This document shows positions 838 through 50,727 of a stretch of DNA of 64,000 nucleotides, piece by piece. The notes beneath the pieces were generated by a model. It worked only from the letters and a program-made list of their open reading frames with translations. It was not told the origin of the DNA and made no database searches. The stretch comes from Macrostomum lignano (taxonomy: Eukaryota). Location: contig NIVC01000573.1 in the NCBI GenBank assembly GCA_002269645.1, positions 372,001 through 436,000 on the forward strand, read 5' to 3'. Each line of letters opens with the position of its first letter. Within the stretch, counting starts at the first letter, position 1. The translations under genes and the position numbers were made by a program.

Positions 838-3260
838 CTAGACTGCCCCGTCAGTCGGGATCGTGTCCAGGTACATCGGCGACTGCAGCGGCGGGTTCAC
901 CGGCAGAGACGCGGCGGAGCTCGGGCAGCAGGCCGTCAAGAGCCTCTTCGTCAGGCTGCGGCTGTCAGCGGAATCCGTGCGGCTGCGACTGCGGCTTCGG
1001 AATATCTGCGGAGAATCGTGGGTTCGGGTGCGGGGTTGCCAAGGACAGCTTTAAGAGGCTGGATTTCGCCGAAATATCTAGTCCATATACTAAAAATGGT
1101 CTGTCGGTATCTATCTATCTATCTAGGTATGCGATCGATTTTAGCAAAAATACTACATGTATTTTAAATACCTACGGAGATAAAAAGTTTTCATTCTTTC
1201 AGCAAAAAATGGTTACTGCTTTAGATAAGAGGCAGACCCAATGTTCACCTTTTGATATGTTGTGCCTTTCTCATAGCTCTATTCACATTCAAAGCCTTCG
1301 TTTAGAAAATTAGAATTCTATGTCGATTTTTTTATTCTACGTACATTTCCTGTACCTGAAAATCAGAAAAATTATGAATCTTTTTTATCATCTCTGCTAC
1401 ACAATATTGTTACACAGCCAGCTAAGATTGATAAAATAGATTCATAAAACCAATGAGTCGAGCCGTGCCATTTCAATGCTTTTTAGGCTGTGTTTGCTCA
1501 TGATGTACACGGGGTGTGTAGCGGCCCTGAATTCTAAGCTTCAGGCATGTACAGTAGACTCTGTGCCTTGGGGACAACCCACGACCAGTTTTCTTGTACA
1601 CAAGCCCGGCCCTGGAAGGGAGCCATTGCAGAACCCCTGCAATGTGACCTTAATGATCTGAGATGAGGTTGGCAGCAGTGGTGACGGCAGCAAGGCTCAC
1701 CTGCAGCAGGTGAAGACAGCCGCCGCAGCAGATGGCCGCATAGGAGAGGCAAACCAGCAGGCCGAACTGGGTGACCAGCGGCAGGGCGGCCACCAGGCCG
1801 AACTTGGCCAGGTCCAGCAGCTGGTTGAGGCTCTCCTGAACTCCGTACACCCGGCCACGCTCCCGCTCCGGCACGGTCTCCAGGAACAGCTGGGTGATGC
1901 TGAGGTCGGCCAGCCACAGCCCCGTGCGCGACACCACGATGCCCGCCAGCAGCAGCGCCACCGACGCGTAGGAAGACGGTCGATCGCCACCGCTGCCGTC
2001 GGTGCCGTTGCCGCCAGCGGCGCCTCCGACATCGAAGGTGAACAGCATCAGCTCGGTGAACTGCGGCTGCGTAACGTTGATCTGCTGGACGGGCGGCGCG
2101 GCCGTCAGGTCGAAGGGGCTGCCTGGCGCGAAGACGGACAGCACGCAGGGCAGGAGGCTGAGCGCCTGCAGAACGAAACCGGTCTGGCCGGAGCTCAGCA
2201 GGCCGAAGCGGGACCGCAGCGCCGGGAACAGCAGGGTGCCCAGCAGGCCGAACACGGCCGACACGGCCAGGCAGCCGGACAGCACGGCCGCTGGCACCGC
2301 CTGTGAGTACACGTAGCCAGTGGTGACATTGTCGAAGCCCAGCACGGTCAGGTACAGGCTGGACAGGGCCAGGCCGGCGCAGAACACGGGCTGCCGGAAG
2401 TACAGCTGCCAGCCCGCCACCTGGTCGCGAATTTGACCAACTATTCGGGTCCGCAAACGGGAATCGGCGGCGGGTGCGGCGGCGGGGGCGGCGGCGGGTG
2501 CAGCGTCATCATTGGCGTCCTCAACAAGAACGTCGGCGTCCTGCTGAGCCGCTTCAGCCGGCTGGTTTTTCTCAGCCAGCCGCGGCACCGAGGCGTAGAT
2601 GTGGCCCAGCAGCGTCCACTCGACGCACATGGAGACGAGGTTCCAGCAGGCCACGGTGATGGCCGAGGCCAGCGGCGACACGAAGGTGGTCACCATGCCG
2701 AATAGCAGCGGCGCCAGCACCTGGCAGGACAGGTCGATGCGGCGCAGGTGCGCGGTGGCCGTCGCTAGCAGCTCTTTGTCCGAGCCGCAGATGGCGACAA
2801 TCCAGTCCTTGGAGACGCAGATCTTCAACGCTACGCTGGCCAGCTGAGCGAGCAGGGCCGTCGCCACCACCAGCGCCTTGGCGGCCTCGAAGGCGGCAGC
2901 GGCCTGAGCGGTCACCAGGCCGGAGAGAATCAGGCAGACGATCACAGCGCACACGCTGACGAGGCCGTTCTGCATCACCAGGCTGGTGCGAGCGGCCAGC
3001 AGCCGGGGCGACCGGTCGATGAGGTTGCCGATGGCCGAGCCCAGCGAGAACACGCCGAGGCTGCAGGAGAGGCCGTACACCGCCGTGAGCGACAGCGAGC
3101 CGGGCGAGATCTGCACCAGGTAGACGCCGACCGCGAAAGTCCACATGCGGTCGCCCCAGGAGGACAGGCAGAACAGGGCGTACAGCAGGCGGCGGGGGCT
3201 GCAGCTGCAGCCGCTGCAGCAGGGGGACGGCTGGAACGGGAGAGGTGAGGGAGAGCGCAT
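838..3260 (-). CDS. SLC40A1: Ferroportin (FPN1/IREG family MFS iron exporter); 2 coding exons 3260-1701 and 1005-838, about 575 aa
   Basis: Family motifs SSWGDRMWTFAV, GNLIDRSPRL, QNGLVSVC, LRRIDLSCQVLAP, LYLTVLGFDNVTTGY, RTGLWLADLSITQLF and QESLNQLLDL. Donor CAG|GTGAGC at 1701/1700 and phase-0 acceptor TTCTCCGCAG|ATATTC at 1006/1005 give a 56-codon last exon ending TAG at 840-838. Confidence 0.93.
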
Positions 3261-26099: not shown

Positions 26100-27409
26100 C
26101 GAGGGTCACTCAGAAAGTCTTTAGCCTGAGTAGGATCCACGAGACGTAGAAGCATGAAATTTGTCTATGGTAAAGACCAACTTTTAAAAGTATCGCAGCA
26201 AAAATTTTAAACAGAAGCAGCCACTTTTGAGTCCACTGCAGCGAGTTAAAGTCAGTTCACCCCCTGAGTTCTTCAATTCAACAATGAAGCTGGAAAATCG
26301 CGACTTCAGAGCAATGATGTACCTGCACTTCAAGCAAGGCAAGTCGCCGGCCGAATCGTATCAAACTTTACAGAACGTTTTCACCCATGTATGTCCTTCA
26401 TACGCAACCGTCAAAAACTGGTTCGCTGAGTTTCGCCGAGGTCGAGAAAGCCTCGAAGATGAACATCGATCCGGGAGACCCTGTGACGCAGTGACTCCAG
26501 AAAATATCTGCGCTGTGTCCAGCATGATTGCCGCTGACCGGCGAGTGACCTACCAGCAGATCCAGCAGGAGATCGGTATTGGATCGGGGAGTGTGCACGC
26601 CATTATGCACGAACACCTTGGAGTGCGGAAGCTGGCTTCCCGGTGGATCCCCCATCAGCTGTCGGACGTGCAGAAGGACACCAGGGTGGCTTGGTGCCGA
26701 TTCATGCTGCAGAAATTCGAATCCGGGACCAGCCGGCGTATCTGGGACATCCTCACGGGCGATGAGACCTGGATTTATCAATACGACCCCGAAAGCAAGC
26801 GCCAGTCAGCCATGTGGACCTTTGGAGACGAGGACAGCCCCACAAAGTTTCGACGCAGCCGGAGTGTCGGCAAGCAGATGGTGGCCTGTTTCTTCATGCG
26901 CACTGGGCATGTGGCTTCCGTTTCACTTGAAGATCGCCAGACAGTCACCGCTGACTGGTACACAACGGTTTGCCTGCCCAAGGTCTTTTCTGCTGTGAGC
27001 CAGAGGCGCCCAAGGTGCGGAATGCGTGGGGTGCTTCTGCACCACGACAACGCCAGCGCGCACACGGCGGCTCAAACTCTGGAGTTTCTGGCTGACTGTG
27101 GGGTCCAGCTGATGACTCACCCTGCTTACAGTCCAGACCTGGCACCGTGCGACTTTTTTCTGTTTCCGAAGTGCAAGGAGATTCTGAAGGGCCAGGTTTT
27201 TTCTTCACCGGAAGAAGCTGTAAATGAGTTCAAAAACATCATCGAGGAGCTCCGGGATGAGGATTGGCGGCATTGCTTCGACAGCTGGTTTCACAGGATG
27301 CAAGCCTGTATCAATGCCGGTGGAGAGTATTTTGAGCACTTGTAGTCGTTTTTTAGTTCATTTGTTGCTGTTTTCTTGTTCAGGCTGAGAACTTTCTGAG
27401 TGACCCTCG
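26100..27409 (+). mobile_element. Full-length mariner DNA transposon, 1310 bp
   Basis: 30-bp TIRs (27/30 identical, CGAGGGTCACTCAGAAAGT...), TA duplication at 26098-26099 and 27410-27411, and a single intact transposase ORF. Confidence 0.97.
26284..27345 (+). CDS. Mariner transposase, DD34D, 353 aa, uninterrupted
   Basis: Motifs WIPHQL, TGDETW, LLHHDNA and HPAYSPDLAPCDFFLF, with 34 residues between the second and third Asp. ATG at 26284. Confidence 0.97.
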   Translation: MKLENRDFRAMMYLHFKQGKSPAESYQTLQNVFTHVCPSYATVKNWFAEFRRGRESLEDEHRSGRPCDAVTPENICAVSSMIAADRRVTYQQIQQEIGIGSGSVHAIMHEHLGVRKLASRWIPHQLSDVQKDTRVAWCRFMLQKFESGTSRRIWDILTGDETWIYQYDPESKRQSAMWTFGDEDSPTKFRRSRSVGKQMVACFFMRTGHVASVSLEDRQTVTADWYTTVCLPKVFSAVSQRRPRCGMRGVLLHHDNASAHTAAQTLEFLADCGVQLMTHPAYSPDLAPCDFFLFPKCKEILKGQVFSSPEEAVNEFKNIIEELRDEDWRHCFDSWFHRMQACINAGGEYFEHL

Positions 27410-29251
27410 TAAACAAAGCTGTCTACTTTCTAGCCAGATCCTGAATGCCATATTGCGGAAGGTGTAGTATACGCCGGACGCCGGAAATCCGGCGTACAAA
27501 CGTTTTGTCTGGCGTACATCTAGCGTTTTTCTCGCTGGCAGTTTTCTCGGCTGGCAATTGTCGACTGGCAATTGTCGACTGGCAGTTGTCGGCTGGCAAT
27601 TGTCGACTGGCAGTTGTCGGCTGGCAATTGTCGACTGGCAGTTGTCGACTGGCAATTGTCGACTGGCAGTTGTCGGCTGGCAATTGTCGACTGGCAGTTG
27701 TCGGCTGGCAGTTGTCGGCTGGCAATTGTCGGCTGGCAATTGTCGACTGGCAGTTGTCGACTGGCAATTGTCAACTGGCAGTTGTCGGCTGGCAGTTTTC
27801 CAGCTGGCAGTTTTCTCGGCTGGCAATTGTCAGCTGGCAGTTGTCGGCTGGCAGTTGTCGGCTGGCAATTGTCGGCTGGCAATTGTCGGCTGGCAATTGT
27901 CGGCTGGCAGTTGTCGGCTGGCAGTTGGGGTGGACGTGATGTGATGCACCGCAGTCTCCTAGCTCCCATATGCCACAGAAAAGACAATTGCGCATTGGAG
28001 GGCATCCGCGGTTTGCAACGATCGAGAGATGTGTCTCTGAAAGTAGAAATTTTATCCAAATTTTACTTTTAAAAAATTAAATCGGAGAATGATTTGCTTT
28101 TAATCAACTTTTTTTGCGTTTCAGTTTGTCTGATAAGCTTCAAATTGGAAGTACAAATATGATTACATGTAAATAATTAAGGTTTCAAGTGCTATATGCA
28201 TCGCTAATATACATATACATAATAATATACATAAGCTTATAGGACAAGTTCCACAAGGTCCAAGGAGGATTAATACAAACGTAATTAGACTACATGTAAG
28301 TGTACTTGAAGTACATAAGATACACGCGTATAGCATGTACGGCACAGGAATCCATAGACTGACCAAGACTCGGGCTTAAGGGAGTCGAGAGTCCAAAACA
28401 AAGAATTGTCACCACCTGGTCAGAAACTTAGAGTTTATGTCGTTGTCTTAATCCACAAATATTAGACCCATACATGTAAGGGACGCAGTAGTATAGATTA
28501 AATCGTTTTTTAATTTAAATGTACATATAAATCAGGTAATGACTCTAGCCTGCAACAAAATGAAGACGGGGGACCGGCCGCTTTTACTTGAACCGATTCG
28601 TTATTTTATTTACACGAATCGTGAGCCATAACTGCAGTCGCGAGCGGAAACTCTGCTGCTAAAAAATGAGCAATCGTTATAGCTCTGTACAATATCACTG
28701 CTCAAGCAGCAGCCACCTTAATGCAAATTCTGCAGCTGTCTCACGAGACCAAAATAATTTGCGCGTCTAAACTCAGCTGCGGGTGAGGTGCAGCCCCGGC
28801 CCCTACAATGATGGGGGTCGCAATCGAAACGAGATGAAAAAATAACAACCAGAGACTATGGAGTTCGGACTCTGTGTGAGTTTTCCGTCTTTAACTATTC
28901 TAAACTCGGTTGAGCACATGGTCGCTAGCTGAATTGCTTATGACAGGCCAAGTCATTGTCTATGCATGAAGGCTCTATGGGTGATGAGGGAGAGAGGCTG
29001 ACAATGCGCCGAATAGCTTGAGTACACACAAGAGAACTTGGCTTGACAGCAAGCAGCCTCTCTTCAGAAGCACATGCCGTAGCAGATCTCTTCTCTATTC
29101 ACGTGTCTGAGGCAAGGCTAATTTCTGCCCTGCTCAAATATATCAAATATAAAACCCTTCCAGTTTCTAGCTGAGGACTGAGGCGAGGCCCTTCTTAGAA
29201 CTGCTCTATAAGCTGAAGGCAGATTAACAATTTCAACGCACTCCGCACAAA

Positions 29252-29978
29252 ATGAGCAAACTGGCACTCTACGGTCTGCTGCTTCTGGCGCTGGTAGCAG
29301 CCACACTGGCTGCTCCGGCTTACGACGATGCGGAGAGCTCCGACGGTGAGTCTGAGACATGATGATAGCTCTAACAAATGGAAGCTGAAGCTAGGACCAC
29401 TTTCACGATTCCACATGGAAACGAATTCCAGATCTTCAATGCCGCATGCGACCCGAAAAGCCTCTCTATCCGGCCCTCGGGGTCCTTTTGAAACTTCACA
29501 AAAGCAATCCGGCCCGCTCAAAGTTGCGTCTCTTCTCAGCTCTCCTCTCTCTTCATCGATTTCATTCCTCCTCTCGTCTCGTCTCGTCTCTTCACCTTCC
29601 CTCATCTCTCCTTTCTCCCATGCATCTCTTTTCTCTCCCAGTTTGCCGACCCCTGCCCCAAGAGTAATTTTTCCTCTACAACTGGATTCGAAATTGAATG
29701 TACTTGAAAGTCTCAACCGCGGACACCCGGTTTTGCAGACGAGGACACGGCCGACTGGCTGGATGACCTGATTGACAAGCGCGGCTTTGGAGCCGCCGGT
29801 CGCAAGGGTCACTTCGTCTCTGGGCCGCACAGGTAGGGCCAAAATTATCCCTTCTCCTTGTAAGGGAAATTTAAATTTATATAAATATAAATTTCAACTG
29901 CTGTGTGCCGATTTCAGGAGGTGCCTGCACTACAAGTTCGGCAAGCACGGCCTGTACTGCGCCAAGTATTCCAGCTAG
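29252..29978 (+). CDS. Secreted prepropeptide A, 82 aa; exons 29252-29345, 29739-29832, 29918-29978
   Basis: MSKLALYGLLLLALVAATLA-APAYDDAESSDDEDTADWLDDLID-KR-GFGAAGRKGHFVSGPHRRCLHYKFGKHGLYCAKYSS*. Splice sites G|GTGAGT, TTTTGCAG|, AG|GTAGGG and ATTTCAG| join in frame (phases 1, 2). GC-rich codon usage matches the other genes. ATTAAA at 30149. Confidence 0.85.
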
Positions 29979-30861: not shown

Positions 30862-33800
30862 TCAGGCGCAGCTCCCGGTGCTCAGCTGCCGGATCGCCAC
30901 GAGTCCCTCCTCGCCGTTGCGCCCGTCGTTCGAGATGCCAACGCAGCCACTGCCGGCGCAGAACGAGCCGCCGCCGCCGCCAGTGTTTTCGTAGGTCGCA
31001 GCCCCCGCTCCGCCGCTGTAGCCACCGCCTCCGCCGCCGGCACCGCAGCTGCTTGTGAAGCCAAAGGCACCGCCGCCGCCACCACCAAAGCCGCCGTCGG
31101 TGCCGGCGTAGCCGCGGCCGCCGACCCATCCTTCGGCGCGGCCGCCGCCGCCCTCGCCGCACCTGTCCTCACGTCGAGTCGAGTTGGCGCCGCTCAGCCA
31201 GCCGGCACCTGGGCCGCCGTAGTAGCCACTGGCAGCAGAGTTCGAAGGCCCGGGCTGGCCGAGAACGCCTCCCGGAGGGTTCTTGTCGGGGTGCGTGCCG
31301 GTACCGTTCTCTCCAGCTTGTCCCGAATAGGCTGCAGGGGCGAAGGGGACAATCATGGTTGCCTGAGTCTTGGCAGAGTGTAAAAATCGAGCCAGAAGGA
31401 CTCAGGCTCAACTCCAGAGGGATGGCTCTCAAAGTACCGTGTGTACTTGTCTGACAATGAGAAAGCTATCGCATTTGTACGCTGGGTGTTGTGGTCTGCG
31501 TGCGTGCTGCAGTCTGCATGTGTGCTGCAGTCTGCATGTTTGCTGCAGTCTGCATGTGTGCTGCAGTCTGCATGTGTGCTGCAGTCTGCATGTGTGCTGC
31601 AGTCTGCATGTGTGCTGCAGTCTGCATGTGTGCTGCAGTCTGCATGTGTGCTACAGTCTGCATGTGTGCTGCAGTCTGCATGTGTGCTGCAGTCTGCATG
31701 TGTGCTACAGTCTGCATGTGTGCTGCAGTCTGCATGTGTGCTGCAGTCTGCATGTTTGCTGCAGTCTGCATGTGTGCTGCAGTCTGCATGTGTGCTGCAG
31801 TCTGCATGTGTGCTGCAGTCTGCATGTGTGCTGCAGTCTGCATGTGTGCTGCAGTCTGCATGTGTGCTGCAGTCTGCATGTTTGCTGCAGTCTGCATGTG
31901 TGCTGCAGTCTGCATGTGTGCTGCAGTCTGCATGTGTGCTGCAGTCTGCATGTTTGCTGCAGTCTGCATGTGTGCTGCAGTCTGCATGTGTGCTGCAGTC
32001 TGCATGTGTGCTGCAGTCTGCATGTGTGCTGCAGTCTGCATGTTTGCTGCAGTCTGCATGTGTGCTGCAGTCTGCATGTGTGCTGCAGTCTGCATGTGTG
32101 CTGCAGTCTGCATGTGTGCTGCAGTCTGCATGTTTGCTGCAGTCTACATGTTTGCTGCAGTCTGCATGTGTGCTGCAGTCTGCATGTTTGCTGCAGTCTG
32201 CATGTTTGCTGCAGTCTGCATGTGTGCTGCAGTCTGCATGTTTGCTGCAGTCTACATGTTTGCTGCAGTCTGCATGTGTGCTGCAGTCTGCATGTGTGCT
32301 GCAGTCTGCATGTGTGCTGCAGTCTGCATGTGTGCTGCAGTCTGCATGTTTGCTGCAGTCTACATGTTTTCTGCAGTCTGCATGTGTGCTGCAGTCTGCA
32401 TGTGTGCTGCAGTCTGCATGTTTGCTGCAGTCTGCATGTGTGCTGCAGTCTGCATGTGTGCTGCAGTCTGCATGTGTGCTGCAGTCTGCATGTGTGCTGC
32501 AGTCTGCATGTGTGCTGCAGTCTGCATGTGTGCTGCAGTCTGCATGTTTGCTGCAGTCTGCATGTGTGCTGCAGTCTGCATGTGTGCTGCAGTCTGCATG
32601 TGTGCTGCAGTCTGCATGTGTGCTGCAGTCTGCATGTTTGCTGCAGTCTGCATGTGTGCTGCAGTCTGCATGTGTGCTGCAGTCTGCATGTGTGCTGTAG
32701 TCTGCATGTGTGCTGCAGTCTGCATGTTTGCTGCAGTCTGCATGTGTGCTGCAGTCTGCATGTGTGCTGCAGTCTGCATGTGTGCTGCAGTCTGCATGTG
32801 TGCTGCAGTCTGCATGTTTGCTGCAGTCTACATGTTTGCTGCAGTCTGCATGTGTGCTGCAGTCTGCACGTGTGCTGCAGCTTACAAAGGAAAGGACAAG
32901 ACGAGCCGCCGCTGCCCCCAGCAGCCAGGTACAGAAACCCGTCGCCGGTGCCGTACACGAAGGAGCCGCCGCCCCCGGCCCCACCGCCATTGGAAACTCC
33001 GGGTTGGCCGCTCTGCCCGACCACAATGGACAGGTGCGTGCCCGCGGCGAGGCTGAAGTTGCCAGCCATCCAGGCGCCTTTGTTCGCTGCTTTGCCCCCT
33101 GAAGAGCCGCCTTTGGCGCCCAACGCCTCGATTCGGTAGCAGCCGGCGACGGTCACCACGGCCTGCTGGACAGAGCCGTTCCGCCCGGTGCCGCTCACTG
33201 CAAGTGAAAATTATCACCATCACCCTTAAGCACTTCTAGTCAGCCGAAGCAGCAAACAATGTTACATGTACTTTTGTTTGATTTAAAGAAGTAAAAATGA
33301 ATTTAGTCGCAGTCTGAATTTTCCCTGCCGCTTCCTCCATCAGCAACCAAAATAGTTTCATGTTGTGGTCGAATACCGACTCACCATTTTACTCACCATT
33401 GAAATTCATTTTAGAGCAATTTTATGATTTCAGAGCCGTTTTACCCACTGGCCACCATTGGACTTGATTTCAGAGCCGTTTTACCCACTGGCCACCATTG
33501 AACTTGATTTCAGAGCCGTTTTACCCACTGGCCACCATTGGTCTTGATTTCAGAGCCGTTTTACCCACTGGCCACCATTGAACTTGATTTCAGAGCCGTT
33601 TTACCCACTGGCCACCACCATTGGACTTGATTTCAGAGCCGTTTTACCCACTGGCCACCATTGAACTTGATTTCAGAGCCGTTTTACCCACTGGCCACCA
33701 CCATTGGACTTGATTTCAGAGCCGTTTTACCCACTGGCCACCATTGAACTTAATTTCAGAGCCGTTTTACCCACTGGCCACCACCATTGGACTTGATTTC

Positions 33801-35031
33801 AGAGCCTGTTTACTCACCATTGGACTTGATTTCAGAGCCTGTTTACTCACCATTGAACTTGATTTCAGAGCCGTTCACCGCCGTAAAAAGCGAGCTCGAG
33901 GCAGCTGAAAATGATGACGATGAAAATTAACTCGCGTCAGTTCCGTAGTATAATGTGTAGACAGAGCGCATATCATTTGCAACACGAAGTCAAAGTCCTG
34001 AGCGCCACAGCTCATACACACGCTCACGCAGGGCCTGAAAGACCTGACTTTCTAATCTTAAGGCATGTCCACTCCCTGTGCCTTGTGGGTTGGCCCTCAT
34101 GGCTGTGACCATCGAGCTGCTGCTCTGCCCCCTCACACACCCTCAAGCTGCTCTCCACATTCAGAAATCGTTCTCAATGGTTACATTTTTTATCATGTAA
34201 CGCAATAAAACCTGAGATTTAAGCCTGAGCGTCTATAAAATTTACAAAATCTCACTTGGCTCGACAGCCATTCGCAGCTGCTCAATCCTTTCTCCAAAAT
34301 CTTCTGCCAGCCACAGCTCATCGCCCGGCTCGGCTCCCAGTTGCCTGGTCACGTGACTGCCGGCCGGTCCAGGCGACTGCAGCAGCCGCAGCACCCGGCA
34401 GAGGCTGCGGTTGCCGCTGAGGACGGCGGCGACGCACCCGGACAGCTGGCTGCAGCGATGGGCGCAGTAAATGCGCGACATGTTGAGCTCTGAGAAGCTG
34501 AGCAGCTCGCTGCTGCTTGAGTTGTCCAGCTGGACTGGCTTGGAGAGTTTGAACAGCCGCTCTGGGGCTTCCGCTGCCAGCAGCTGGCTTGCGGACTCGA
34601 CCAGGAGAATAAAAAGCGGCACTGGCGGCGGTAGAGCAGAGTGAATTGATGAGCTCGTTGCCAAGGCAGTCAGCAGGCACTCAGCAGGTAGTCAGCAGGC
34701 AGTCAGCAGGCAGTCAGCAGGCAGTCAGCAGGTAGACAGCAGGCAGTCAGCAGGCAGTAAGCAGGCACTCAGCAGGTACTCAGCAGGCAGTCAGCAGGCA
34801 GTCAGCAGGCAGTCAGCAGGCAGTCAGCAGGCAGTCAGCAGGCACTCAGCAGGTACTCAGCAGGCAGTCAGCAGGCACTCAGCAGGCAGTCAGCAGGCAG
34901 TCAGCAGGCAGTCAGCAGGCAGTCAGCAGGCACTCAGCAGGTACTCAGCAGGCAGTCAGCAGGCACTCAGCATGTAAAGACAGACAAGTTAGGCACATAA
35001 GCAGCATTTGCTTACCGGCTAGCCAGAACAT
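30862..35031 (-). CDS. Secreted protein with PAN/Apple-like domain plus ALK/LTK-type glycine-rich domain, 387 aa; exons 35031-35016, 34621-34256, 33197-32886, 31331-30862
   Basis: Signal peptide MFWLA|VPLFILLVESASQLLA. PAN-like Cys pattern CAHRCSQLSGC...LCRVL. Gly-rich domain motifs GCYRIEALGAKGG, LSIVVGQSG, GGGGSFV, LAAGGSGG, GGFGGGGG, GGGGGYSGG and GGGGSF. All introns are phase 1 GT-AG and the frame stays open. Confidence 0.82.
31495..32880. repeat. 18-bp minisatellite (GCTGCAGTCTGCATGTGT), about 77 copies, intron 3 of the PAN/Gly-rich gene
   Basis: Tandem periodicity; begins immediately after the GTAAG donor on the - strand. Confidence 0.97.
33425..33870. repeat. 40/43-bp minisatellite (GATTTCAGAGCCGTTTTACCCACTGGCCACCATTGGACTT), intron 2 of the PAN/Gly-rich gene
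   Basis: About 11 tandem units, some with an extra CAC. Confidence 0.93.
34665..34970. repeat. 11-bp minisatellite (GCAGTCAGCAG), intron 1 of the PAN/Gly-rich gene
   Basis: Tandem periodicity. Confidence 0.93.
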
Positions 35032-35520
35032 TCCGACATGAATTCCAGTCCTTAATCAGCTTAGATTCCCAGAGGCTTTCAGTCTCAAAAATTCGCTGGC
35101 TTCAGCTCAGACCCGCAGGTATTTTATGTATTCATTTCTATCCAGAAGTTGCCATGGCAACAATCACAAACAGCCAAACTCTATGTAAAGATGAATGGGG
35201 AAAGCTATCGTGGAAAATCCAGCAGAAATCGATGATTTGATCAACGCTTTTTCCCCCGAGTCCTCAACATCAAGGACGCCGACCCGCGGCTTGTTCAGCC
35301 CAGGCTATCTTCTTCAAGCCATCTTTAAGCGCTTGGTGAACGCTTTGCTGCCCCCATGGCGCTCCTCTGCTATCTGATGCCGCTTGCTAGACAGAGGAAA
35401 CCCATGGGTATTTATAGTTATTTCATTGTTTCGCTTTTTCATGAGGCCAATCTGCTCAAAACGGTTTAAATTATACATTTTAGCAAAAAAACATCGTCTA
35501 TTTTTAACAAAATAGCGTTA

Positions 35521-38500
35521 GTGACTTGTTACAGTCCTATTACTGCATGGTTAGTGACTTGTTACAGTCCTATTACTGCATGGTTAGTGACTTGTTACAG
35601 TCCTATTACTGCATGGTTAGTGACTTGTTACAGTCCTATTACTGCATGGTTAGTGACTTGTTACAGTCCTATTACTGCATGGTTTAGTGACTTGTTACAG
35701 TCCTATTACTGCATGGTTAGTGACTTGTTACAGTCCTATTACTGCATGGTTAGTGACTTGTTACAGTCCTATTACTGCATGGTTAGTGACTTGTTACAGT
35801 CCTATTACTGCATGGTTAGTGACTTGTTACAGTCCTATTACTGCATGGTTTAGTGACTTGTTACAGTCCTATTACTGCATGGTTTAGTGACTTGTTACAG
35901 TCCTATTACTGCATGGTTTAGTGACTTGTTACAGTCCTATTACTGCATGGTTTAGTGACTTGTTACAGTCCTATTACTGCATGGTTTAGTGACTTGTTAC
36001 AGTCCTATTACTGCATGGTTTAGTGACTTGTTACAGTCCTATTACTGCATGGTTTAGTGACTTGTTACAGTCCTATTACTGCATGGTTTAGTGACTTGTT
36101 ACAGTCCTATTACTGCATGGTTTAGTGACTTGTTACAGTCCTATTACTGCATGGTTTAGTGACTTGTTACAGTCCTATTACTGCATGGTTTAGTGACTTG
36201 TTACAGTCCTATTACTGCATGGTTTAGTGACTTGTTACAGTCCTATTACTGCATGGTTTAGTGACTTGTTACAGTCCTATTACTGCATGGTTAGTGACTT
36301 GTTACAGTCCTATTACTGCATGGTTAGTGACTTGTTACAGTCCTATTACTGCATGGTTAGTGACTTGTTACAGTCCTATTACTGCATGGTTAGTGACTTG
36401 TTACAGTCCTATTACTGCATGGTTAGTGACTTGTTACAGTCCTATTACTGCATGGTTAGTGACTTGTTACAGTCCTATTACTGCATGGTTAGTGACTTGT
36501 TACAGTCCTATTACTGCATGGTTAGTGACTTGTTACAGTCCTATTACTGCATGGTTAGTGACTTGTTACAGTCCTATTACTGCATGGTTAGTGACTTGTT
36601 ACAGTCCTATTACTGCATGGTTAGTGACTTGTTACAGTCCTATTACTGCATGGTTAGTGACTTGTTACAGTCCTATTACTGCATGGTTAGTGACTTGTTA
36701 CAGTCCTATTACTGCATGGTTAGTGACTTGTTACAGTCCTATTACTGCATGGTTAGTGACTTGTTACAGTCCTATTACTGCATGGTTAGTGACTTGTTAC
36801 AGTCCTATTACTGCATGGTTAGTGACTTGTTACAGTCCTATTACTGCATGGTTAGTGACTTGTTACAGTCCTATTACTGCATGGTTAGTACTTGTTACAG
36901 TCCTATTACTGCATGGTTAGTACTTGTTACAGTCCTATTACTGCATGGTTAGTGACTTGTTACAGTCCTATTACTGCATGGTTAGTGACTTGTTACAGTC
37001 CTATTACTGCATGGTTAGTGACTTGTTACAGTCCTATTACTGCATGGTTAGTGACTTGTTACAGTCCTATTACTGCATGGTTAGTGACTTGTTACAGTCC
37101 TATTACTGCATGGTTAGTGACTTGTTACAGTCCTATTACTGCATGGTTAGTGACTTGTTACAGTCCTATTACTGCATGGTTAGTGACTTGTTACAGTCCT
37201 ATTACTGCATGGTTAGTGACTTGTTACAGTCCTATTACTGCATGGTTAGTGACTTGTTACAGTCCTATTACTGCATGGTTAGTGACTTGTTACAGTCCTA
37301 TTACTGCATGGTTAGTGACTTGTTACAGTCCTATTACTGCATGGTTAGTGACTTGTTACAGTCCTATTACTGCATGGTTAGTGACTTGTTACAGTCCTAT
37401 TACTGCATGGTTAGTGACTTGTTACAGTCCTATTACTGCATGGTTAGTGACTTGTTACAGTCCTATTACTGCATGGTTAGTGACTTGTTACAGTCCTATT
37501 ACTGCATGGTTAGTGACTTGTTACAGTCCTATTACTGCATGGTTAGTGACTTGTTACAGTCCTATTACTGCATGGTTAGTGACTTGTTACAGTCCTATTA
37601 CTGCATGGTTAGTGACTTGTTACAGTCCTATTACTGCATGGTTAGTGACTTGTTACAGTCCTATTACTGCATGGTTAGTGACTTGTTACAGTCCTATTAC
37701 TGCATGGTTAGTGACTTGTTACAGTCCTATTACTGCATGGTTAGTGACTTGTTACAGTCCTATTACTGCATGGTTTAGTGACTTGTTACAGTCCTATTAC
37801 TGCATGGTTTAGTGACTTGTTACAGTCCTATTACTGCATGGTTTAGTGACTTGTTACAGTCCTATTACTGCATGGTTTAGTGACTTGTTACAGTCCTATT
37901 ACTGCATGGTTTAGTGACTTGTTACAGTCCTATTACTGCATGGTTTAGTGACTTGTTACAGTCCTATTACTGCATGGTTTAGTGACTTGTTACAGTCCTA
38001 TTACTGCATGGTTTAGTGACTTGTTACAGTCCTATTACTGCATGGTTTAGTGACTTGTTACAGTCCTATTACTGCATGGTTTAGTGACTTGTTACAGTCC
38101 TATTACTGCATGGTTTAGTGACTTGTTACAGTCCTATTACTGCATGGTTTAGTGACTTGTTACAGTCCTATTACTGCATGGTTTAGTGACTTGTTACAGT
38201 CCTATTACTGCATGGTTAGTGACTTGTTACAGTCCTATTACTGCATGGTTAGTGACTTGTTACAGTCCTATTACTGCATGGTTAGTGACTTGTTACAGTC
38301 CTATTACTGCATGGTTAGTGACTTGTTACAGTCCTATTACTGCATGGTTAGTGACTTGTTACAGTCCTATTACTGCATGGTTAGTGACTTGTTACAGTCC
38401 TATTACTGCATGGTTAGTGACTTGTTACAGTCCTATTACTGCATGGTTAGTGACTTGTTACAGTCCTATTACTGCATGGTTAGTGACTTGTTACAGTCCT

Positions 38501-41500
38501 ATTACTGCATGGTTAGTGACTTGTTACAGTCCTATTACTGCATGGTTAGTGACTTGTTACAGTCCTATTACTGCATGGTTAGTGACTTGTTACAGTCCTA
38601 TTACTGCATGGTTAGTGACTTGTTACAGTCCTATTACTGCATGGTTAGTGACTTGTTACAGTCCTATTACTGCATGGTTAGTGACTTGTTACAGTCCTAT
38701 TACTGCATGGTTAGTGACTTGTTACAGTCCTATTACTGCATGGTTAGTGACTTGTTACAGTCCTATTACTGCATGGTTAGTGACTTGTTACAGTCCTATT
38801 ACTGCATGGTTAGTGACTTGTTACAGTCCTATTACTGCATGGTTAGTGACTTGTTACAGTCCTATTACTGCATGGTTAGTGACTTGTTACAGTCCTATTA
38901 CTGCATGGTTAGTGACTTGTTACAGTCCTATTACTGCATGGTTAGTGACTTGTTACAGTCCTATTACTGCATGGTTAGTGACTTGTTACAGTCCTATTAC
39001 TGCATGGTTAGTGACTTGTTACAGTCCTATTACTGCATGGTTAGTGACTTGTTACAGTCCTATTACTGCATGGTTAGTGACTTGTTACAGTCCTATTACT
39101 GCATGGTTAGTGACTTGTTACAGTCCTATTACTGCATGGTTAGTGACTTGTTACAGTCCTATTACTGCATGGTTAGTGACTTGTTACAGTCCTATTACTG
39201 CATGGTTAGTGACTTGTTACAGTCCTATTACTGCATGGTTAGTGACTTGTTACAGTCCTATTACTGCATGGTTAGTGACTTGTTACAGTCCTATTACTGC
39301 ATGGTTAGTGACTTGTTACAGTCCTATTACTGCATGGTTAGTGACTTGTTACAGTCCTATTACTGCATGGTTAGTGACTTGTTACAGTCCTATTACTGCA
39401 TGGTTAGTGACTTGTTACAGTCCTATTACTGCATGGTTAGTGACTTGTTACAGTCCTATTACTGCATGGTTAGTGACTTGTTACAGTCCTATTACTGCAT
39501 GGTTAGTGACTTGTTACAGTCCTATTACTGCATGGTTAGTGACTTGTTACAGTCCTATTACTGCATGGTTAGTGACTTGTTACAGTCCTATTACTGCATG
39601 GTTAGTGACTTGTTACAGTCCTATTACTGCATGGTTAGTGACTTGTTACAGTCCTATTACTGCATGGTTAGTGACTTGTTACAGTCCTATTACTGCATGG
39701 TTAGTGACTTGTTACAGTCCTATTACTGCATGGTTAGTGACTTGTTACAGTCCTATTACTGCATGGTTTAGTGACTTGTTACAGTCCTATTACTGCATGG
39801 TTAGTGACTTGTTACAGTCCTATTACTGCATGGTTTAGTGACTTGTTACAGTCCTATTACTGCATGGTTTAGTGACTTGTTACAGTCCTATTACTGCATG
39901 GTTAGTGACTTGTTACAGTCCTATTACTGCATGGTTAGTGACTTGTTACAGTCCTATTACTGCATGGTTAGTGACTTGTTACAGTCCTATTACTGCATGG
40001 TTAGTGACTTGTTACAGTCCTATTACTGCATGGTTAGTGACTTGTTACAGTCCTATTACTGCATGGTTAGTGACTTGTTACAGTCCTATTACTGCATGGT
40101 TAGTGACTTGTTACAGTCCTATTACTGCATGGTTAGTGACTTGTTACAGTCCTATTACTGCATGGTTAGTGACTTGTTACAGTCCTATTACTGCATGGTT
40201 AGTGACTTGTTACAGTCCTATTACTGCATGGTTAGTGACTTGTTACAGTCCTATTACTGCATGGTTAGTGACTTGTTACAGTCCTATTACTGCATGGTTA
40301 GTGACTTGTTACAGTCCTATTACTGCATGGTTAGTGACTTGTTACAGTCCTATTACTGCATGGTTAGTGACTTGTTACAGTCCTATTACTGCATGGTTAG
40401 TGACTTGTTACAGTCCTATTACTGCATGGTTAGTGACTTGTTACAGTCCTATTACTGCATGGTTAGTGACTTGTTACAGTCCTATTACTGCATGGTTAGT
40501 GACTTGTTACAGTCCTATTACTGCATGGTTAGTGACTTGTTACAGTCCTATTACTGCATGGTTAGTGACTTGTTACAGTCCTATTACTGCATGGTTAGTG
40601 ACTTGTTACAGTCCTATTACTGCATGGTTAGTGACTTGTTACAGTCCTATTACTGCATGGTTAGTGACTTGTTACAGTCCTATTACTGCATGGTTAGTGA
40701 CTTGTTACAGTCCTATTACTGCATGGTTAGTGACTTGTTACAGTCCTATTACTGCATGGTTAGTGACTTGTTACAGTCCTATTACTGCATGGTTAGTGAC
40801 TTGTTACAGTCCTATTACTGCATGGTTAGTGACTTGTTACAGTCCTATTACTGCATGGTTAGTGACTTGTTACAGTCCTATTACTGCATGGTTAGTGACT
40901 TGTTACAGTCCTATTACTGCATGGTTAGTGACTTGTTACAGTCCTATTACTGCATGGTTAGTGACTTGTTACAGTCCTATTACTGCATGGTTAGTGACTT
41001 GTTACAGTCCTATTACTGCATGGTTAGTGACTTGTTACAGTCCTATTACTGCATGGTTAGTGACTTGTTACAGTCCTATTACTGCATGGTTAGTGACTTG
41101 TTACAGTCCTATTACTGCATGGTTAGTGACTTGTTACAGTCCTATTACTGCATGGTTAGTGACTTGTTACAGTCCTATTACTGCATGGTTAGTGACTTGT
41201 TACAGTCCTATTACTGCATGGTTAGTGACTTGTTACAGTCCTATTACTGCATGGTTAGTGACTTGTTACAGTCCTATTACTGCATGGTTAGTGACTTGTT
41301 ACAGTCCTATTACTGCATGGTTAGTGACTTGTTACAGTCCTATTACTGCATGGTTAGTGACTTGTTACAGTCCTATTACTGCATGGTTAGTGACTTGTTA
41401 CAGTCCTATTACTGCATGGTTAGTGACTTGTTACAGTCCTATTACTGCATGGTTAGTGGCTTGTTACAGTCCTATTACTGCATGGTTAGTGGCTTGTTAC

Positions 41501-42773
41501 AGTCCTATTACTGCATGGTTAGTGGCTTGTTACAGTCCTATTACTGCATGGTTAGTGACTTGTTACAGTCCTATTACTGCATGGTTAGTGACTTGTTACA
41601 GTCCTATTACTGCATGGTTAGTGACTTGTTACAGTCCTATTACTGCATGGTTAGTGACTTGTTACAGTCCTATTACTGCATGGTTAGTGACTTGTTACAG
41701 TCCTATTACTGCATGGTTAGTGACTTGTTACAGTCCTATTACTGCATGGTTAGTGACTTGTTACAGTCCTATTACTGCATGGTTAGTGACTTGTTACAGT
41801 CCTATTACTGCATGGTTAGTGACTTGTTACAGTCCTATTACTGCATGGTTAGTGACTTGTTACAGTCCTATTACTGCATGGTTAGTGACTTGTTACAGTC
41901 CTATTACTGCATGGTTAGTGACTTGTTACAGTCCTATTACTGCATGGTTAGTGACTTGTTACAGTCCTATTACTGCATGGTTAGTGACTTGTTACAGTCC
42001 TATTACTGCATGGTTAGTGACTTGTTACAGTCCTATTACTGCATGGTTAGTGACTTGTTACAGTCCTATTACTGCATGGTTAGTGACTTGTTACAGTCCT
42101 ATTACTGCATGGTTAGTGACTTGTTACAGTCCTATTACTGCATGGTTAGTGACTTGTTACAGTCCTATTACTGCATGGTTAGTGACTTGTTACAGTCCTA
42201 TTACTGCATGGTTAGTGACTTGTTACAGTCCTATTACTGCATGGTTAGTGACTTGTTACAGTCCTATTACTGCATGGTTAGTGACTTGTTACAGTCCTAT
42301 TACTGCATGGTTAGTGACTTGTTACAGTCCTATTACTGCATGGTTAGTGACTTGTTACAGTCCTATTACTGCATGGTTAGTGACTTGTTACAGTCCTATT
42401 ACTGCATGGTTAGTGACTTGTTACAGTCCTATTACTGCATGGTTAGTGACTTGTTACAGTCCTATTACTGCATGGTTAGTGACTTGTTACAGTCCTATTA
42501 CTGCATGGTTAGTGACTTGTTACAGTCCTATTACTGCATGGTTAGTGACTTGTTACAGTCCTATTACTGCATGGTTAGTGACTTGTTACAGTCCTATTAC
42601 TGCATGGTTAGTGGCTTGTTACAGTCCTATTACTGCATGGTTAGTGACTTGTTACAGTCCTATTACTGCATGGTTAGTGACTTGTTACAGTCCTATTACT
42701 GCATGGTTAGTGACTTGTTACAGTCCTATTACTGCATGGTTAGTGTCTTGTTACAGTCCTATTACTGCATGGT
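35521..42773. repeat. Homogeneous 33-bp satellite (GTGACTTGTTACAGTCCTATTACTGCATGGTTA), about 220 copies, 7.25 kb
   Basis: Near-identical head-to-tail units with no spacers. Rare 34-bp (+T), 32-bp (-G) and A>G variants. Confidence 0.99.
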
Positions 42774-42854: not shown

Positions 42855-42860
42855 TTTATT
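42855..42860 (-). terminator. Poly(A) signal AATAAA of prepropeptide B gene
   Basis: TTTATT on + strand, about 75 nt downstream of the TAA at 42935. Confidence 0.6.
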
Positions 42861-42934: not shown

Positions 42935-44508
42935 TTAGTTGTTGAAGTAGGAAACGCAGACCAGTTTGCGGCCGGTGAACCTGTACTTGCGGCAGCGTCT
43001 GCGGGAACGATATCGGATGTTGATGCTGGTCAGGTTTTCACATTCACGATCGAGCGTATTCATTACTCCGTACTCATGAAGGGAATTTGAACAGGGTCGG
43101 AACAGCTCAGAGGTAACCACATTCATTTGGGGGGCTTGTGTGCACAACAGTTGGCCAGAAGTTTGTCCTGAGATTCGATCATATCTATGAGGTCCAACCC
43201 CAATTAGGCACAATCTGCCTGACGATTATAGAAAGTCAGGGGCCTGTGTGAGCGCGTGTGTCTGCGTGCAGTATTGTCGCGCTTGTATGTGTTCAGGAGT
43301 CAAGAGGGGAATTGGGCAGAATTGCCTCAGAGTTGGTTGCTTGTTTGACGATATCGCCGAAGTTTTTTTGCAAGGGTGCCAACAACACAACCCGAATATT
43401 GTTATTAGAGAAATTGTTCAGGCACCAAGGCTCACTGGCTCATACATTCACGTTAGATGCAAAGGTGCGTAGGTAATTGACAATTTAAAATGTAGTGAAT
43501 TCGCAGGTGAAAGGTCACGGCTAACCTGCGCGACAGCTTCTTCCTGTAACTGCCGGTGCCGGAGAAACCGCCGAATCGCGATCGAAATTTCGGGACGCTG
43601 GGCGCTGCGGTGGCCGGCGTCGTCGACGTCGCAGTCTCCGCCGCCGTAGGCGCCGGAGCGTCCAGATGCAAGTGCTCATCGAGATCGTCTTCATCGTCGT
43701 GACGATGATGCTGATGATGCAAATGATTCATATCCGGCAGGTGGTGGACATCTTCCTGCACAGCGAAGGACTCCATGATGTCCATCTCGGCCTCATCTGG
43801 GAAAGGGCGGTTCAGTTTGGCAATTGCATGCTTCATCAGGCTGACTATTCAACATAAGAATTGAAGTATGCGGAGCCCCAAAATCTGACGAGGTGAGCCC
43901 AAATTACAGGAAATTCTGTAGGGCCAAATGGAGCAGCACGTGTAGAAGTACTGCCAACAGTTTGACCTTCAGACACAGACTTGTGACGGCACTACAAGTC
44001 CGTTGGAGTCAAAAAGCGATTAACATGACACTAACCTTCGTCTTTGGCGTGCGCGCCTTTCCTGATCGAGGTTACATGTAAATCTGGCGATAGCCATCCA
44101 CTGCTGGCTTTTTGTTTCAGGGTCATACTGAGAAACCACATGATTCGTCACCTAAGTCATGACCCGTTCCAAGAAGTCGTGGTCGTCAGGCGTCAGGGAC
44201 CACCACGTTCGGGGGTATCAAAGAATTTCGTCAGTGCTTCAAGGCATGGCAGGACGGAAATTCAGCGTTGCATTGACTGCAGGGGTGACGAGTGATTGCT
44301 TGCTTTGAAGAGTTCAAAGCGGAGTGACTTTCTTAAGACCTCACAGCCGAGACTAAAGGCACAGTCCCGATACCTCATGTCGCACCGATCGTATTAGCAC
44401 ATGAAACTTACACGTCGCCTCCTTAGCAGCGGAATAATCGGATACAATAATCAGCATCCCGGTCACCATAGCAACAAAGGCAAAATCGAAGAACTTCAAG
44501 GCAGCCAT
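42935..44508 (-). CDS. Secreted prepropeptide B, 159 aa; exons 44508-44412, 43844-43526, 42998-42935
   Basis: Hydrophobic leader MAALKFFDFAFVAMVTGMLIIVSDYSA (accATG). The His/Asp-rich and then Thr/Ala/Pro-rich pro-region is followed by ...RSR-FGGFSGTGSYRKKLSRRRCRKYRFTGRKLVCVSYFNN*. Splice sites T|GTAAGT, GAATAG|, AG|GTTAGC and CCCGCAG| join in frame (phases 1, 2). Confidence 0.82.
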
Positions 44509-45011
44509 GGTTGAACCGATCGAGAGAGCAGCTGCGTCAAAAAATTGTTCGCTTAACAAATTCGATTCCAAGTTGTTGTTATACTAATTGTTACACCGAG
44601 TAGTAAATTATAAGCCAACCTGTGTCTCGCTGTCTTGACTGAGTTGGCCTTTCCGATAGTAAATTAGATCAAACTCAGCAACACTAAGTCAGTCTAGTCT
44701 AGGTTTCACAATTTGCACTGCATTGGTGCTCGGCTGCTTGGCATGACAAACTTCTAGCTTCCCTGCTGCCCCGGAACTCCCTATACAAGAAGACAGGCGC
44801 TGAATTGTACATGCAATAAAGGAGCAAAACAAAGTACTGGGTGGACCAGTGAGATGCAAGTTAATTTGCACTTTTATTGGCGTAACATAATTTACACGTT
44901 CGGTATATTTTACATAAATCAGAATATGCACTTACACTTTGCCAACATTTGCAACTGCCCAATATTTAATGGCAGTAAGCGTCAGGCTGTGAATGCGATT
45001 TCAATGTGAAT

Positions 45012-45789: not shown

Positions 45790-50727
<4,938 letters not shown>

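What the first reader, a model, noticed from the sequence alone, without database searches (positions are those of the whole stretch)
42935..44508. Gene B: 159-aa precursor with a +11 C-terminal hairpin peptide
Seen: three separate ORF-track fragments (44353-44571, 43453-43836, 42935-43213) join through canonical splice sites into one frame. There is an accATG start and an AATAAA 75 nt after the stop. The last 37 aa contain 7 Arg + 4 Lys and no acidic residues. The cleavage after FRSR is inferred only from alignment with gene A and is not a canonical R-X-K/R-R furin site.
Basis: partly seen in the sequence, partly recalled or inferred. Interest (0 to 1): 0.75.

Follow-up and report, generated by a model that had tools for sequence, protein, structure and literature searches.

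The report
Flatworm cationic hairpin-peptide precursor gene
This is a real, transcribed three-exon gene of the flatworm Macrostomum lignano, with a nearby paralog, that encodes a small secreted precursor ending in a very basic peptide with a two-cysteine loop; it looks like a lineage-specific defence or signalling peptide, but its function is untested.

Summary
The window is Macrostomum lignano contig NIVC01000573.1. The finding is the GenBank gene BOX15_Mlig011470g2, listed as a hypothetical protein.

**What holds up**
- The three ORF fragments exist.
- The start context is accATGg.
- AATAAA lies 75 nt after the stop.
- The tail has 7 Arg and 4 Lys and no acidic residue.

**What does not hold up**
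- Every database model starts exon 2 at 43796, including the RNA-seq-based GenBank models.
- The precursor is therefore 143 aa, not 159. The C-terminal peptide is unchanged.

**Gene A**
- It is a true paralog. It has the same three exons and intron phases 1 and 2. Intron 2 splits the Arg codon two residues before the first Cys in both genes.
- It shares the motif RRC-x2-Y-[KR]-F-x5-L-x-C-x2-Y.
- Its KR site aligns with gene B's RSR.

**Other evidence**
- AlphaFold2 predicts a β-hairpin over the cysteine loop in both proteins (pLDDT about 70-82).
- The anionic pro-regions roughly balance the cationic tails (B: -12 against +11; A: about -9 against +7).
- No homolog was found outside M. lignano. 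Pfam, PDB and Foldseek gave no match.

**Verdict:** a secreted prepropeptide that releases a disulfide-stapled cationic hairpin. A host-defence role is the most likely function and a neuropeptide role is the main rival.

The parts
44607..44612 (-). TATAAT box, about 25 nt upstream of the 5' ends of the annotated transcripts (about 44583-44590)
   Evidence: Read from the sequence. The partial CDS models start at 44562 (P0001) and 21 nt further upstream (P0003). Promoter function is inferred.
44412..44508 (-). Gene B exon 1 (CDS part): accATGg start and a hydrophobic signal peptide, MAALKFFDFAFVAMVTGMLIIVSDYSAA; phase-1 donor T|GTAAGT
   Evidence: UniProt names the orthologous models 'Secreted protein'. 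AF2 predicts an N-terminal helix.
43797..43844 (-). It is intronic in every database model.
43526..43796 (-). Gene B exon 2 as in the RNA-based annotation: an acidic, His-rich pro-region (net -12, 10 His), then KFRSR and the Gly/Phe-rich start of the basic peptide; phase-2 donor AG|GTTAGC
   Evidence: The 6-bp His-His indel between genomic copies is in frame.
44036..44086 (-). Alternative 5' exon inside intron 1, used by the partial g1 model (P0004: ...RKGAHAKDE|DEAEMDIM); donor G|GTTAGT
   Evidence: The same sequence is present in the window. Not followed further.
42935..42998 (-). Gene B exon 3: (R)RCRKYRFTGRKLVCVSYFNN plus the stop. The C-x11-C loop is coded at 42994-42956.
   Evidence: AF2 predicts a hairpin here.
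42938..43575 (-). Span coding the putative 37-aa mature peptide FGGFSGTGSYRKKLSRRRCRKYRFTGRKLVCVSYFNN (43575-43526 plus 42998-42938, interrupted by intron 2)
   Evidence: The N-terminus is inferred from the alignment with gene A's KR site.
42855..42860 (-). AATAAA polyadenylation signal, 75 nt after the stop
29252..29345 (+). Gene A (Mlig024524) exon 1: signal peptide MSKLALYGLLLLALVAATLA and the start of the acidic pro-region; phase-1 donor. A TATAAG box lies at 29207-29212.
29739..29832 (+). Gene A exon 2: acidic pro-region ...DWLDDLIDKR, then GFGAAGRKGHFVSGPH(R); phase-2 donor AG|GTAGGG
29918..29978 (+). Gene A exon 3: (R)RCLHYKFGKHGLYCAKYSS plus the stop; C-x11-C loop

Best explanation
Gene B (Mlig011470) and its convergent neighbour gene A (Mlig024524) form a small gene family found so far only in Macrostomum. 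Both encode secreted prepropeptides.

**Proposed steps**
1. A signal peptide directs the product into the secretory pathway.
2. An anionic pro-region neutralises and chaperones the cationic tail. In B this region is also His-rich.
3. A subtilisin-like proprotein convertase cuts at a basic site: KR in A and the aligned RSR in B, and possibly also the conserved RR before the first Cys.
4. This releases a C-terminal peptide of 36-37 aa, or 18-19 aa. Its two Cys, 11 residues apart, staple a β-hairpin that carries a conserved Tyr-(Lys/Arg)-Phe...Leu face.

**Function:** with +11 (B) or +7 (A) net charge and about 35-50% hydrophobic or aromatic residues, the most likely role is a host-defence peptide that binds and perturbs anionic microbial membranes, in the manner of other disulfide-stapled cationic hairpins.

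**Shown:** gene structure, database transcript models, paralogy, charge pattern, and intact copies.
**Predicted:** signal peptide and hairpin.
**Inferred:** cleavage sites, disulfide, and antimicrobial activity.
For: - **The gene is real and transcribed.** The GenBank model is reproduced exactly from the window, and that annotation is RNA-seq based.
- **Three syntenic genomic copies.** All three carry intact B and A genes next to a DEAD-box helicase.
- **Paralogy of A and B.**
  - Both have three exons and intron phases 1 and 2, and intron 2 lies in the Arg codon two residues before Cys1.
  - BLASTP on the loop alone gives E=4e-4.
  - The aligned invariant residues are R, GF, G, RRC, Y, F, L, C and Y.
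- **Charge balance.** B has a pro-region of -12 against a mature peptide of +11. A has about -9 against +7 (counted from the sequence).
- **Hairpin prediction.** AF2 predicts a hairpin in both paralogs independently. In A the strands flank a single residue (G71), which implies that C65 lies opposite C77; the tool reports no coordinates.
- **Constraint on the loop.** Between homeologs the two Cys loops show 3 synonymous and 0 non-synonymous changes. Across both whole genes the counts are 9 synonymous and 6-7 non-synonymous.
- **Hydrophobic face.** In the disulfide register one face of the hairpin is aromatic and hydrophobic in both paralogs.
- **Orphan status.** No relatives appear among 1.84 billion representative proteins. 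From general knowledge, this is usual for invertebrate antimicrobial peptides.
- **Literature context.** The flatworm antimicrobial peptide repertoire is described as essentially uncharted, and classical lophotrochozoan families are absent from flatworms (PMC10414684).
Against: - No expression site, induction data or peptide-level data could be reached. Six supplement searches for the gene ids found nothing.
- No sequence, Pfam, PDB or Foldseek similarity to any known antimicrobial peptide was found.
- The facial amphipathicity of the hairpin is only moderate.
- In the AF2 model of B the strand limits suggest a register that does not put the two Cys opposite each other.
- Gene A is only +7 and is rich in His and Gly.
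- The residues conserved between the paralogs are specific side chains (Y-[KR]-F, L, Y) rather than just charge and Cys. This is as typical of a receptor ligand as of an antimicrobial peptide.
- RSR is not a canonical convertase site.
Confidence: 0.45

Rival explanations
1. Genes A and B are neuropeptide or peptide-hormone precursors. The acidic spacer is discarded. Prohormone convertases cut at KR (A) or RSR (B), and at the conserved RR before Cys1. This would give a long and a short form of a C-terminal disulfide-cyclised peptide, as somatostatin-28 and somatostatin-14 are made. The loop would present an aromatic-basic-aromatic triad (Y-K/R-F) to a G-protein-coupled receptor.
For: - The cyclic peptide lies at the C-terminus behind basic sites, and RR is conserved directly before Cys1 in both paralogs.
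- Specific loop residues are conserved (Y, K/R, F, L), with 0 non-synonymous changes in the loops between homeologs.
- Gene A (82 aa with a single KR) has the size and layout of a typical small prohormone.
- B's N-terminus, FGGFSG...RKKL, resembles nociceptin (shuffle p about 3e-4).
- From general knowledge, somatostatin, urotensin II and MCH are all C-terminal disulfide loops in their precursors.
Against: - There is no significant similarity to somatostatin, cortistatin, urotensin II, MCH, allatostatin-C or CCAP.
- The ring has 11 internal residues, unlike any of those.
- There is no amidation signal at the C-terminus.
- A net charge of +11 over 37 residues is unusually high for a neuropeptide.
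- RK dibasic pairs inside B's loop would be cut by the same convertases unless the fold protects them.
- The nociceptin-like motif is absent from gene A (p=0.88).
- No orthologs were detected in other flatworms, whereas most neuropeptide families are conserved across a phylum.
Confidence: 0.3
2. The product is a secreted effector with another extracellular job. Candidates are a seminal-fluid or reproductive peptide, a gland secretion used in adhesion and release or in mucus, or a defensive or predatory toxin-like peptide.
For: - It has a signal peptide, a small size and orphan status, features that recall the fast-evolving reproductive and adhesive genes described for Macrostomum (abstracts listed; the orphan link is my inference).
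- The strongly charged tail and the His-rich acidic pro-region could mediate binding to polyanions, metals or surfaces.
Against: - The gene ids are absent from the held supplements of the adhesion study and of the three-species RNA-Seq study of reproduction-related genes. Those files may be incomplete.
- Nothing in the sequence points specifically to any of these roles.
Confidence: 0.17
3. The ORF is not a functional coding gene and is only a transcribed ORF of no consequence, or the C-terminal exon belongs to another transcript.
For: - The homeologous copies are about 98% identical in introns as well as exons, so conservation between copies says little.
- There are no homologs outside the species.
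Against: - The RNA-based annotation joins exactly these exons.
- A diverged paralog keeps the same exon structure, intron phases, Cys spacing and stop position.
- All six gene copies (three of A, three of B) are intact.
- The indel in exon 2 is in frame, whereas intron indels are 2 and about 238 bp.
- Synonymous changes outnumber non-synonymous ones.
Confidence: 0.03

Closest known systems
Disulfide-stapled cationic β-hairpin host-defence peptides (thanatin, arenicin, tachyplesin, protegrin, bactenecin): a structural class, not one homologous family
   Same: A short, very basic peptide with Cys-stapled antiparallel strands, and aromatic and aliphatic residues alternating with Arg/Lys. B has a Thr-Gly turn flanked by basic residues, as thanatin does (from memory). 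It is released from a larger secretory precursor.
   Different: No sequence similarity beyond composition. It has a single disulfide with an odd spacing of 11 residues, an 18-residue Gly-rich N-terminal extension and a 5-6 residue tail. The precursor has no BRICHOS or cathelin domain. Activity is untested.
Hydra arminin-type precursors (taxonomically restricted antimicrobial peptides)
   Same: The same architecture, recalled from the literature: signal peptide, strongly anionic pro-region, and a highly cationic C-terminal peptide released by cleavage. Both are lineage-restricted orphan genes.
   Different: Arminins are linear and lack Cys. There is no sequence relationship.
Somatostatin / urotensin II / MCH / allatostatin-C type prohormones
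   Same: A small precursor with the bioactive disulfide-cyclised peptide at the extreme C-terminus behind mono- or dibasic sites. Long and short forms are possible (KR or RSR against RR). An aromatic-basic-aromatic triad lies in the loop.
   Different: The ring size and the FWKT, FWKY or CYFNPISC cores are absent. There is no significant alignment. The charge is far higher. No receptor evidence is available.
Nociceptin/orphanin FQ (vertebrate opioid-family peptide)
   Same: B's predicted N-terminus FGGFSGTGSYRKKLS matches FGGFTGARKSARKLA at 7 of 15 positions (FGGF, G6, K13, L14), with two more conservative. It lies directly after a basic cleavage site.
   Different: The match is not conserved in paralog A. 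The precursor lacks the N-terminal six-Cys domain of opioid precursors. The peptide continues into a Cys loop. The comparison was made post hoc from memory.
Flatworm helical antimicrobial peptides with a C-terminal CXXXC loop (e.g. mesco-2 of Mesocestoides corti, PMC13149500)
   Same: A flatworm cationic peptide with a Gly-containing N-terminal part and a disulfide loop near the C-terminus.
   Different: Mesco-2 is α-helical with a tiny C-x3-C loop. Here the loop is C-x11-C and is predicted to be β-hairpin. No homology was tested beyond the absence of shared motifs.

Membership tests
Cationic β-hairpin antimicrobial peptides (structural class) | Secretory precursor with an N-terminal signal peptide | tested here: met
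   Both proteins have a hydrophobic N-terminus. AF2 predicts N-terminal helices. UniProt names the B models 'Secreted protein'. No dedicated signal-peptide predictor was available.
Cationic β-hairpin antimicrobial peptides (structural class) | Short, strongly cationic mature peptide folding as a disulfide-stapled antiparallel hairpin | tested here: inconclusive
   Net charge is +11 (B) and +7 (A), with two Cys spaced by 11 residues. AF2 predicts a hairpin at pLDDT 70-82 in both. The strand limits in A imply that the Cys lie opposite each other, but those in B do not. The disulfide itself was not observed.
Cationic β-hairpin antimicrobial peptides (structural class) | Amphipathic separation of hydrophobic and cationic faces | tested here: inconclusive
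   In the disulfide register one face is RVYKFG (B) or LYYGFK (A) and the other is CCKLRR (B) or CCHLKH (A). The segregation is only moderate.
Cationic β-hairpin antimicrobial peptides (structural class) | Antimicrobial or membrane-permeabilising activity | not testable with these tools
   This needs synthetic peptide assays.
Arenicin-type BRICHOS-associated antimicrobial peptides | BRICHOS domain in the precursor | tested here: not met
   The Pfam scan of the 143-aa protein returned no family at E<=10.
Cathelicidins (e.g. protegrin) | Cathelin pro-domain | tested here: not met
   No Pfam hit. The pro-region is acidic, His-rich and predicted disordered.
Somatostatin / urotensin II / allatostatin-C superfamily | C-terminal cyclic peptide preceded by basic processing sites | tested here: met
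   Both genes have KR or RSR and then RR upstream of a loop that ends 5-6 residues before the stop.
Somatostatin / urotensin II / allatostatin-C superfamily | Family ring size and core motif (C-x10-C with FWKT; C-x4-C with FWKY; C-x6-C with YFNPIS) | tested here: not met
   The ring is C-x11-C with Y-[KR]-F. Local alignments are no better than shuffles (p 0.2-0.9). Comparator sequences were recalled from memory.
Opioid / nociceptin precursors | [YF]GGF at the N-terminus of a peptide flanked by basic sites | tested here: inconclusive
   Present in B (RSR|FGGF; shuffle p about 3e-4) but absent in paralog A (KR|GFGA; p=0.88).
Opioid / nociceptin precursors | Conserved six-cysteine N-terminal domain of the precursor | tested here: not met
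   B has no Cys outside the C-terminal loop.

The most novel reading that the evidence does not exclude
Genes A and B may encode endogenous signalling peptides rather than antimicrobials. They would be a flatworm-specific cyclic-peptide hormone family processed into long and short forms, like somatostatin-28 and somatostatin-14. Convertase cleavage of B would expose a nociceptin-like FGGF(S/T)G...(R/K)KL N-terminus. If that end engages a somatostatin- or opioid-related receptor, it would be the first opioid/nociceptin-like ligand identified in a protostome. It would also give a molecular handle on the long-described but unexplained opioid pharmacology of flatworms.
Probability: 0.04. Interest if true: 0.9.

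Novelty: new member of a known kind. Interest (0 to 1): 0.45.

Why it matters
A phylum-wide screen found that flatworms lack the classical lophotrochozoan antimicrobial peptide families and called their repertoire undescribed (PMC10414684). That paper is one of few sources on flatworm immune effectors.

A two-gene family of disulfide-looped, highly cationic peptides, restricted to Macrostomum as far as these searches reach, would be a concrete candidate for such effectors. M. lignano is a tractable model for testing it, with RNAi by soaking, transgenesis and transparent tissue. If the peptides turn out to be hormones instead, they would add a new cyclic-peptide signalling family.

For annotation, the result assigns a testable function to two "hypothetical proteins".

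Tried and rejected
**Homology and structure searches that found nothing useful**
- The word-indexed search of 5.8 billion proteins with B and with A found only M. lignano copies.
- phmmer of B against 1.84 billion representatives found only M. lignano.
- The profile search with the A+B mature-peptide alignment found no candidate, because the tool needs three shared 5-mers. It says little.
- The pattern and tblastn scan of JGI metagenome contigs confirmed none of its 293 pattern matches.
- Pfam gave nothing. PDB by sequence gave nothing.
- Foldseek against PDB returned no match for the B model and only matches at E >= 0.45 for the A model. Both models are mostly low-confidence outside the hairpin.

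**Literature**
- No paper mentions Mlig011470, Mlig024524 or the peptide strings.
- The gene ids are absent from the held supplements of six M. lignano papers.
- The peptide strings are absent from the held, truncated part of the flatworm antimicrobial-peptide list of PMC10414684.

**Other attempts**
- My first scans for "gene A" in the window failed: tblastn with B, and scans for cationic C-termini. Gene A was found only through an annotated 82-aa neighbour in the homeologous contigs.

**Readings considered and rejected**
- *Amidated RF-type peptide from ...YRFTGRK.* The G-basic motif is not conserved in position in gene A and lies inside the loop.

Full report
**Source and identity.** Window 32935-54562 is 100% identical to Macrostomum lignano assembly GCA_002269645.1, contig NIVC01000573.1, positions 404935-426562 reversed. 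The finding coincides with the annotated gene BOX15_Mlig011470g2, protein PAA80609.1, "hypothetical protein, partial". Two further genomic copies, g3 on NIVC01000709.1 and g1 on NIVC01002845.1, lie in the same context downstream of a DEAD-box helicase gene. This fits the neopolyploid genome of this species.

**Checking the observation.** The start context is caaccATGg. AATAAA starts 75 nt after the stop. The last 37 residues, FGGFSGTGSYRKKLSRRRCRKYRFTGRKLVCVSYFNN, hold 7 Arg, 4 Lys, no acidic residue and two Cys.

One element fails. The GenBank protein is reproduced exactly from the window only if exon 2 starts at 43796, acceptor ccctttcccag|AT. All six database models of the three copies use that acceptor. 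The GenBank annotation of this assembly was derived from RNA-seq (StringTie/TACO) and a de novo transcriptome (PMC5730564). The first donor (44412) and the second intron (43526/42998) therefore have transcript-model support, and the 43844 acceptor has none. The precursor is most likely 143 aa. The C-terminal peptide is not affected.

**Finding gene A.** Direct searches of the window with gene B found no paralog. The homeologous contigs carry an annotated 82-aa gene on the opposite strand, about 4.7 kb downstream of B. Its sequence maps to the window at 29252-29345, 29739-29832 and 29918-29978 on the + strand. This is BOX15_Mlig024524. It encodes MSKLALYGLLLLALVAATLAAPAYDDAESSD-DEDTADWLDDLIDKR-GFGAAGRKGHFVSGPHR-RCLHYKFGKHGLYCAKYSS. 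Genes A and B are convergent and 13 kb apart in the window. They are separated here by satellite arrays.

**Paralogy.**
- Both genes have three coding exons with intron phases 1 and 2. In both, intron 2 splits the Arg codon two residues before the first Cys (AG|G in A, AG|A in B).
- The last exons align as RRCLHYKFGKHGLYCAKY against RRCRKYRFTGRKLVCVSY, with pairwise BLASTP E=4e-4 on 19 residues.
- MAFFT aligns A's KR with B's SR, followed by a shared GF-x2-G motif.
RSR remains non-canonical, and a conserved RR directly before Cys1 is an alternative or additional site.
- Only these two loci in the window and the fetched contigs carry the motif.

**Protein anatomy.**
- *Gene B:* a hydrophobic N-terminus; a 78-residue pro-region of net charge -12 with 10 His; then the 37-mer of +11.
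- *Gene A:* a pro-region of about -9 and a 36-mer of +7 with 4 His (counted from the sequence).
- *AlphaFold2, single sequence:* for B, an N-terminal helix, a disordered middle and strands 125-131 and 134-140 at pLDDT 72-82. For A, strands 55-59, 63-70 and 72-79 at pLDDT about 70. The last two strands flank a single residue (G71), which implies that C65 lies opposite C77; no coordinates were available to confirm this.
- *Hairpin faces:* in the disulfide register one face is aromatic and hydrophobic in both paralogs, but the amphipathicity is only moderate.

**Selection.**
- The three genomic copies are about 96-98% identical in introns as well as exons, so conservation between them carries little information.
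- All copies of both genes are intact.
- The exon 2 indel is 6 bp and in frame, while the intron indels are 2 and about 238 bp.
- Summed over both genes, substitutions are 9 synonymous against 6-7 non-synonymous. Within the two Cys loops they are 3 synonymous against 0 non-synonymous.
- This is weak but consistent evidence for purifying selection.

**Relatives and known families.**
- No protein outside M. lignano was found by any search.
- Pfam, PDB sequence search and Foldseek gave nothing meaningful.
- I aligned a panel of cyclic neuropeptides and hairpin antimicrobial peptides, recalled from memory, to the two mature peptides. Scores were mostly no better than shuffles, with two marginal values for B (lactoferricin B p=0.012, gomesin p=0.038) that would not survive correction for 34 tests. 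The one clear exception was nociceptin.
- B's N-terminus matches nociceptin at FGGF-[ST]-G...[RK]-K-L (shuffle p about 3e-4). Gene A does not (p=0.88).
- That resemblance was noticed post hoc and is not conserved in the paralog, so I treat it as a lead only.

**Interpretation.** The anatomy is that of a secreted prepropeptide whose product is a C-terminal, disulfide-looped, strongly basic peptide.
- *Host-defence peptide (confidence 0.45).* This is favoured by the extreme charge density of B, by anionic pro-regions whose charge tracks that of the tail in both paralogs, by orphan status, and by the hairpin prediction.
- *Neuropeptide or hormone (0.30).* This is favoured by the C-terminal cyclic peptide behind basic sites, the RR conserved before Cys1, and conservation of particular loop side chains (Y-[KR]-F, L).
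- *Other secreted roles (0.17).* Reproductive, adhesive or defensive secretion.
- *Non-functional ORF (0.03).*
- I could not reach expression or peptide-level data. Six supplement searches for the gene ids were negative.

**Novelty.** The genes are already in GenBank as hypothetical proteins. No paper in the searchable library mentions them or their peptide sequences. A phylum-wide screen reports that flatworms lack classical lophotrochozoan antimicrobial peptide families and that the flatworm repertoire is undescribed (PMC10414684). That screen included both M. lignano assemblies, and the held (truncated) part of its candidate list does not contain these peptides. I rate the finding as a new member of a known kind: a cationic, disulfide-stapled peptide made from a precursor with an anionic pro-region. 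Interest is moderate.

Noticed in passing
window 35517-42773: A 33-bp tandem repeat (GTTAGTGACTTGTTACAGTCCTATTACTGCATG), about 219 copies at 99% identity, starts about 80 nt past gene B's poly(A) signal. It creates spurious ORFs of about 1000 aa. The homeologous contig (L002) has only about 1-2 units at this spot, so this is a copy-specific 7-kb satellite expansion between genes B and A.
   Followed up: partly
window 31494-32880; 33425-33875; 34664-34972: Further tandem arrays lie between genes A and B: 18 bp x 77, 40/83 bp x 5-11, and 11 bp x 28. The 18-bp array gives long artefactual ORFs on both strands.
   Followed up: no
window 45790-50727 (-): A DEAD-box helicase gene (640 aa, PF00270 and PF00271) lies upstream of gene B in all three homeologous contigs. 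Several GC-rich tandem repeats (21, 31, 30 and 32 bp, at 46123-50000) lie inside its span. I did not determine whether they are intronic or coding.
   Followed up: no
window 44036-44086 (-), inside intron 1 of gene B: The partial g1 model (P0004) uses an alternative 5' exon here (...RKGAHAKDE), spliced to the same 43796-type acceptor. That transcript would lack the signal peptide.
   Followed up: partly
gene B exon 2, acceptor ccaccgcag|CG near window 43607: A 79-aa database protein (P0008) joins exon 1 directly to ...SPSVPKFRSRFGGF..., skipping the whole acidic His-rich pro-region. It could be an alternative isoform or a prediction artefact.
   Followed up: no
window 43575-43526 (-), N-terminus of the putative mature peptide: FGGFSGTGSYRKKLS resembles vertebrate nociceptin (FGGFTGARKSARKLA) directly after a basic cleavage site. 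The shuffle p is about 3e-4, but the comparison was post hoc and the motif is not shared by gene A.
   Followed up: partly
window 1650-3260 (-): A single 536-aa ORF with a full-length ferroportin (PF06963) match, E=9e-123.
   Followed up: no
window 26227-27345 (+): A Mos1/mariner-type transposase remnant (HTH_48, Transposase_1 and DDE_3 matches) lies about 2 kb upstream of gene A.
   Followed up: no
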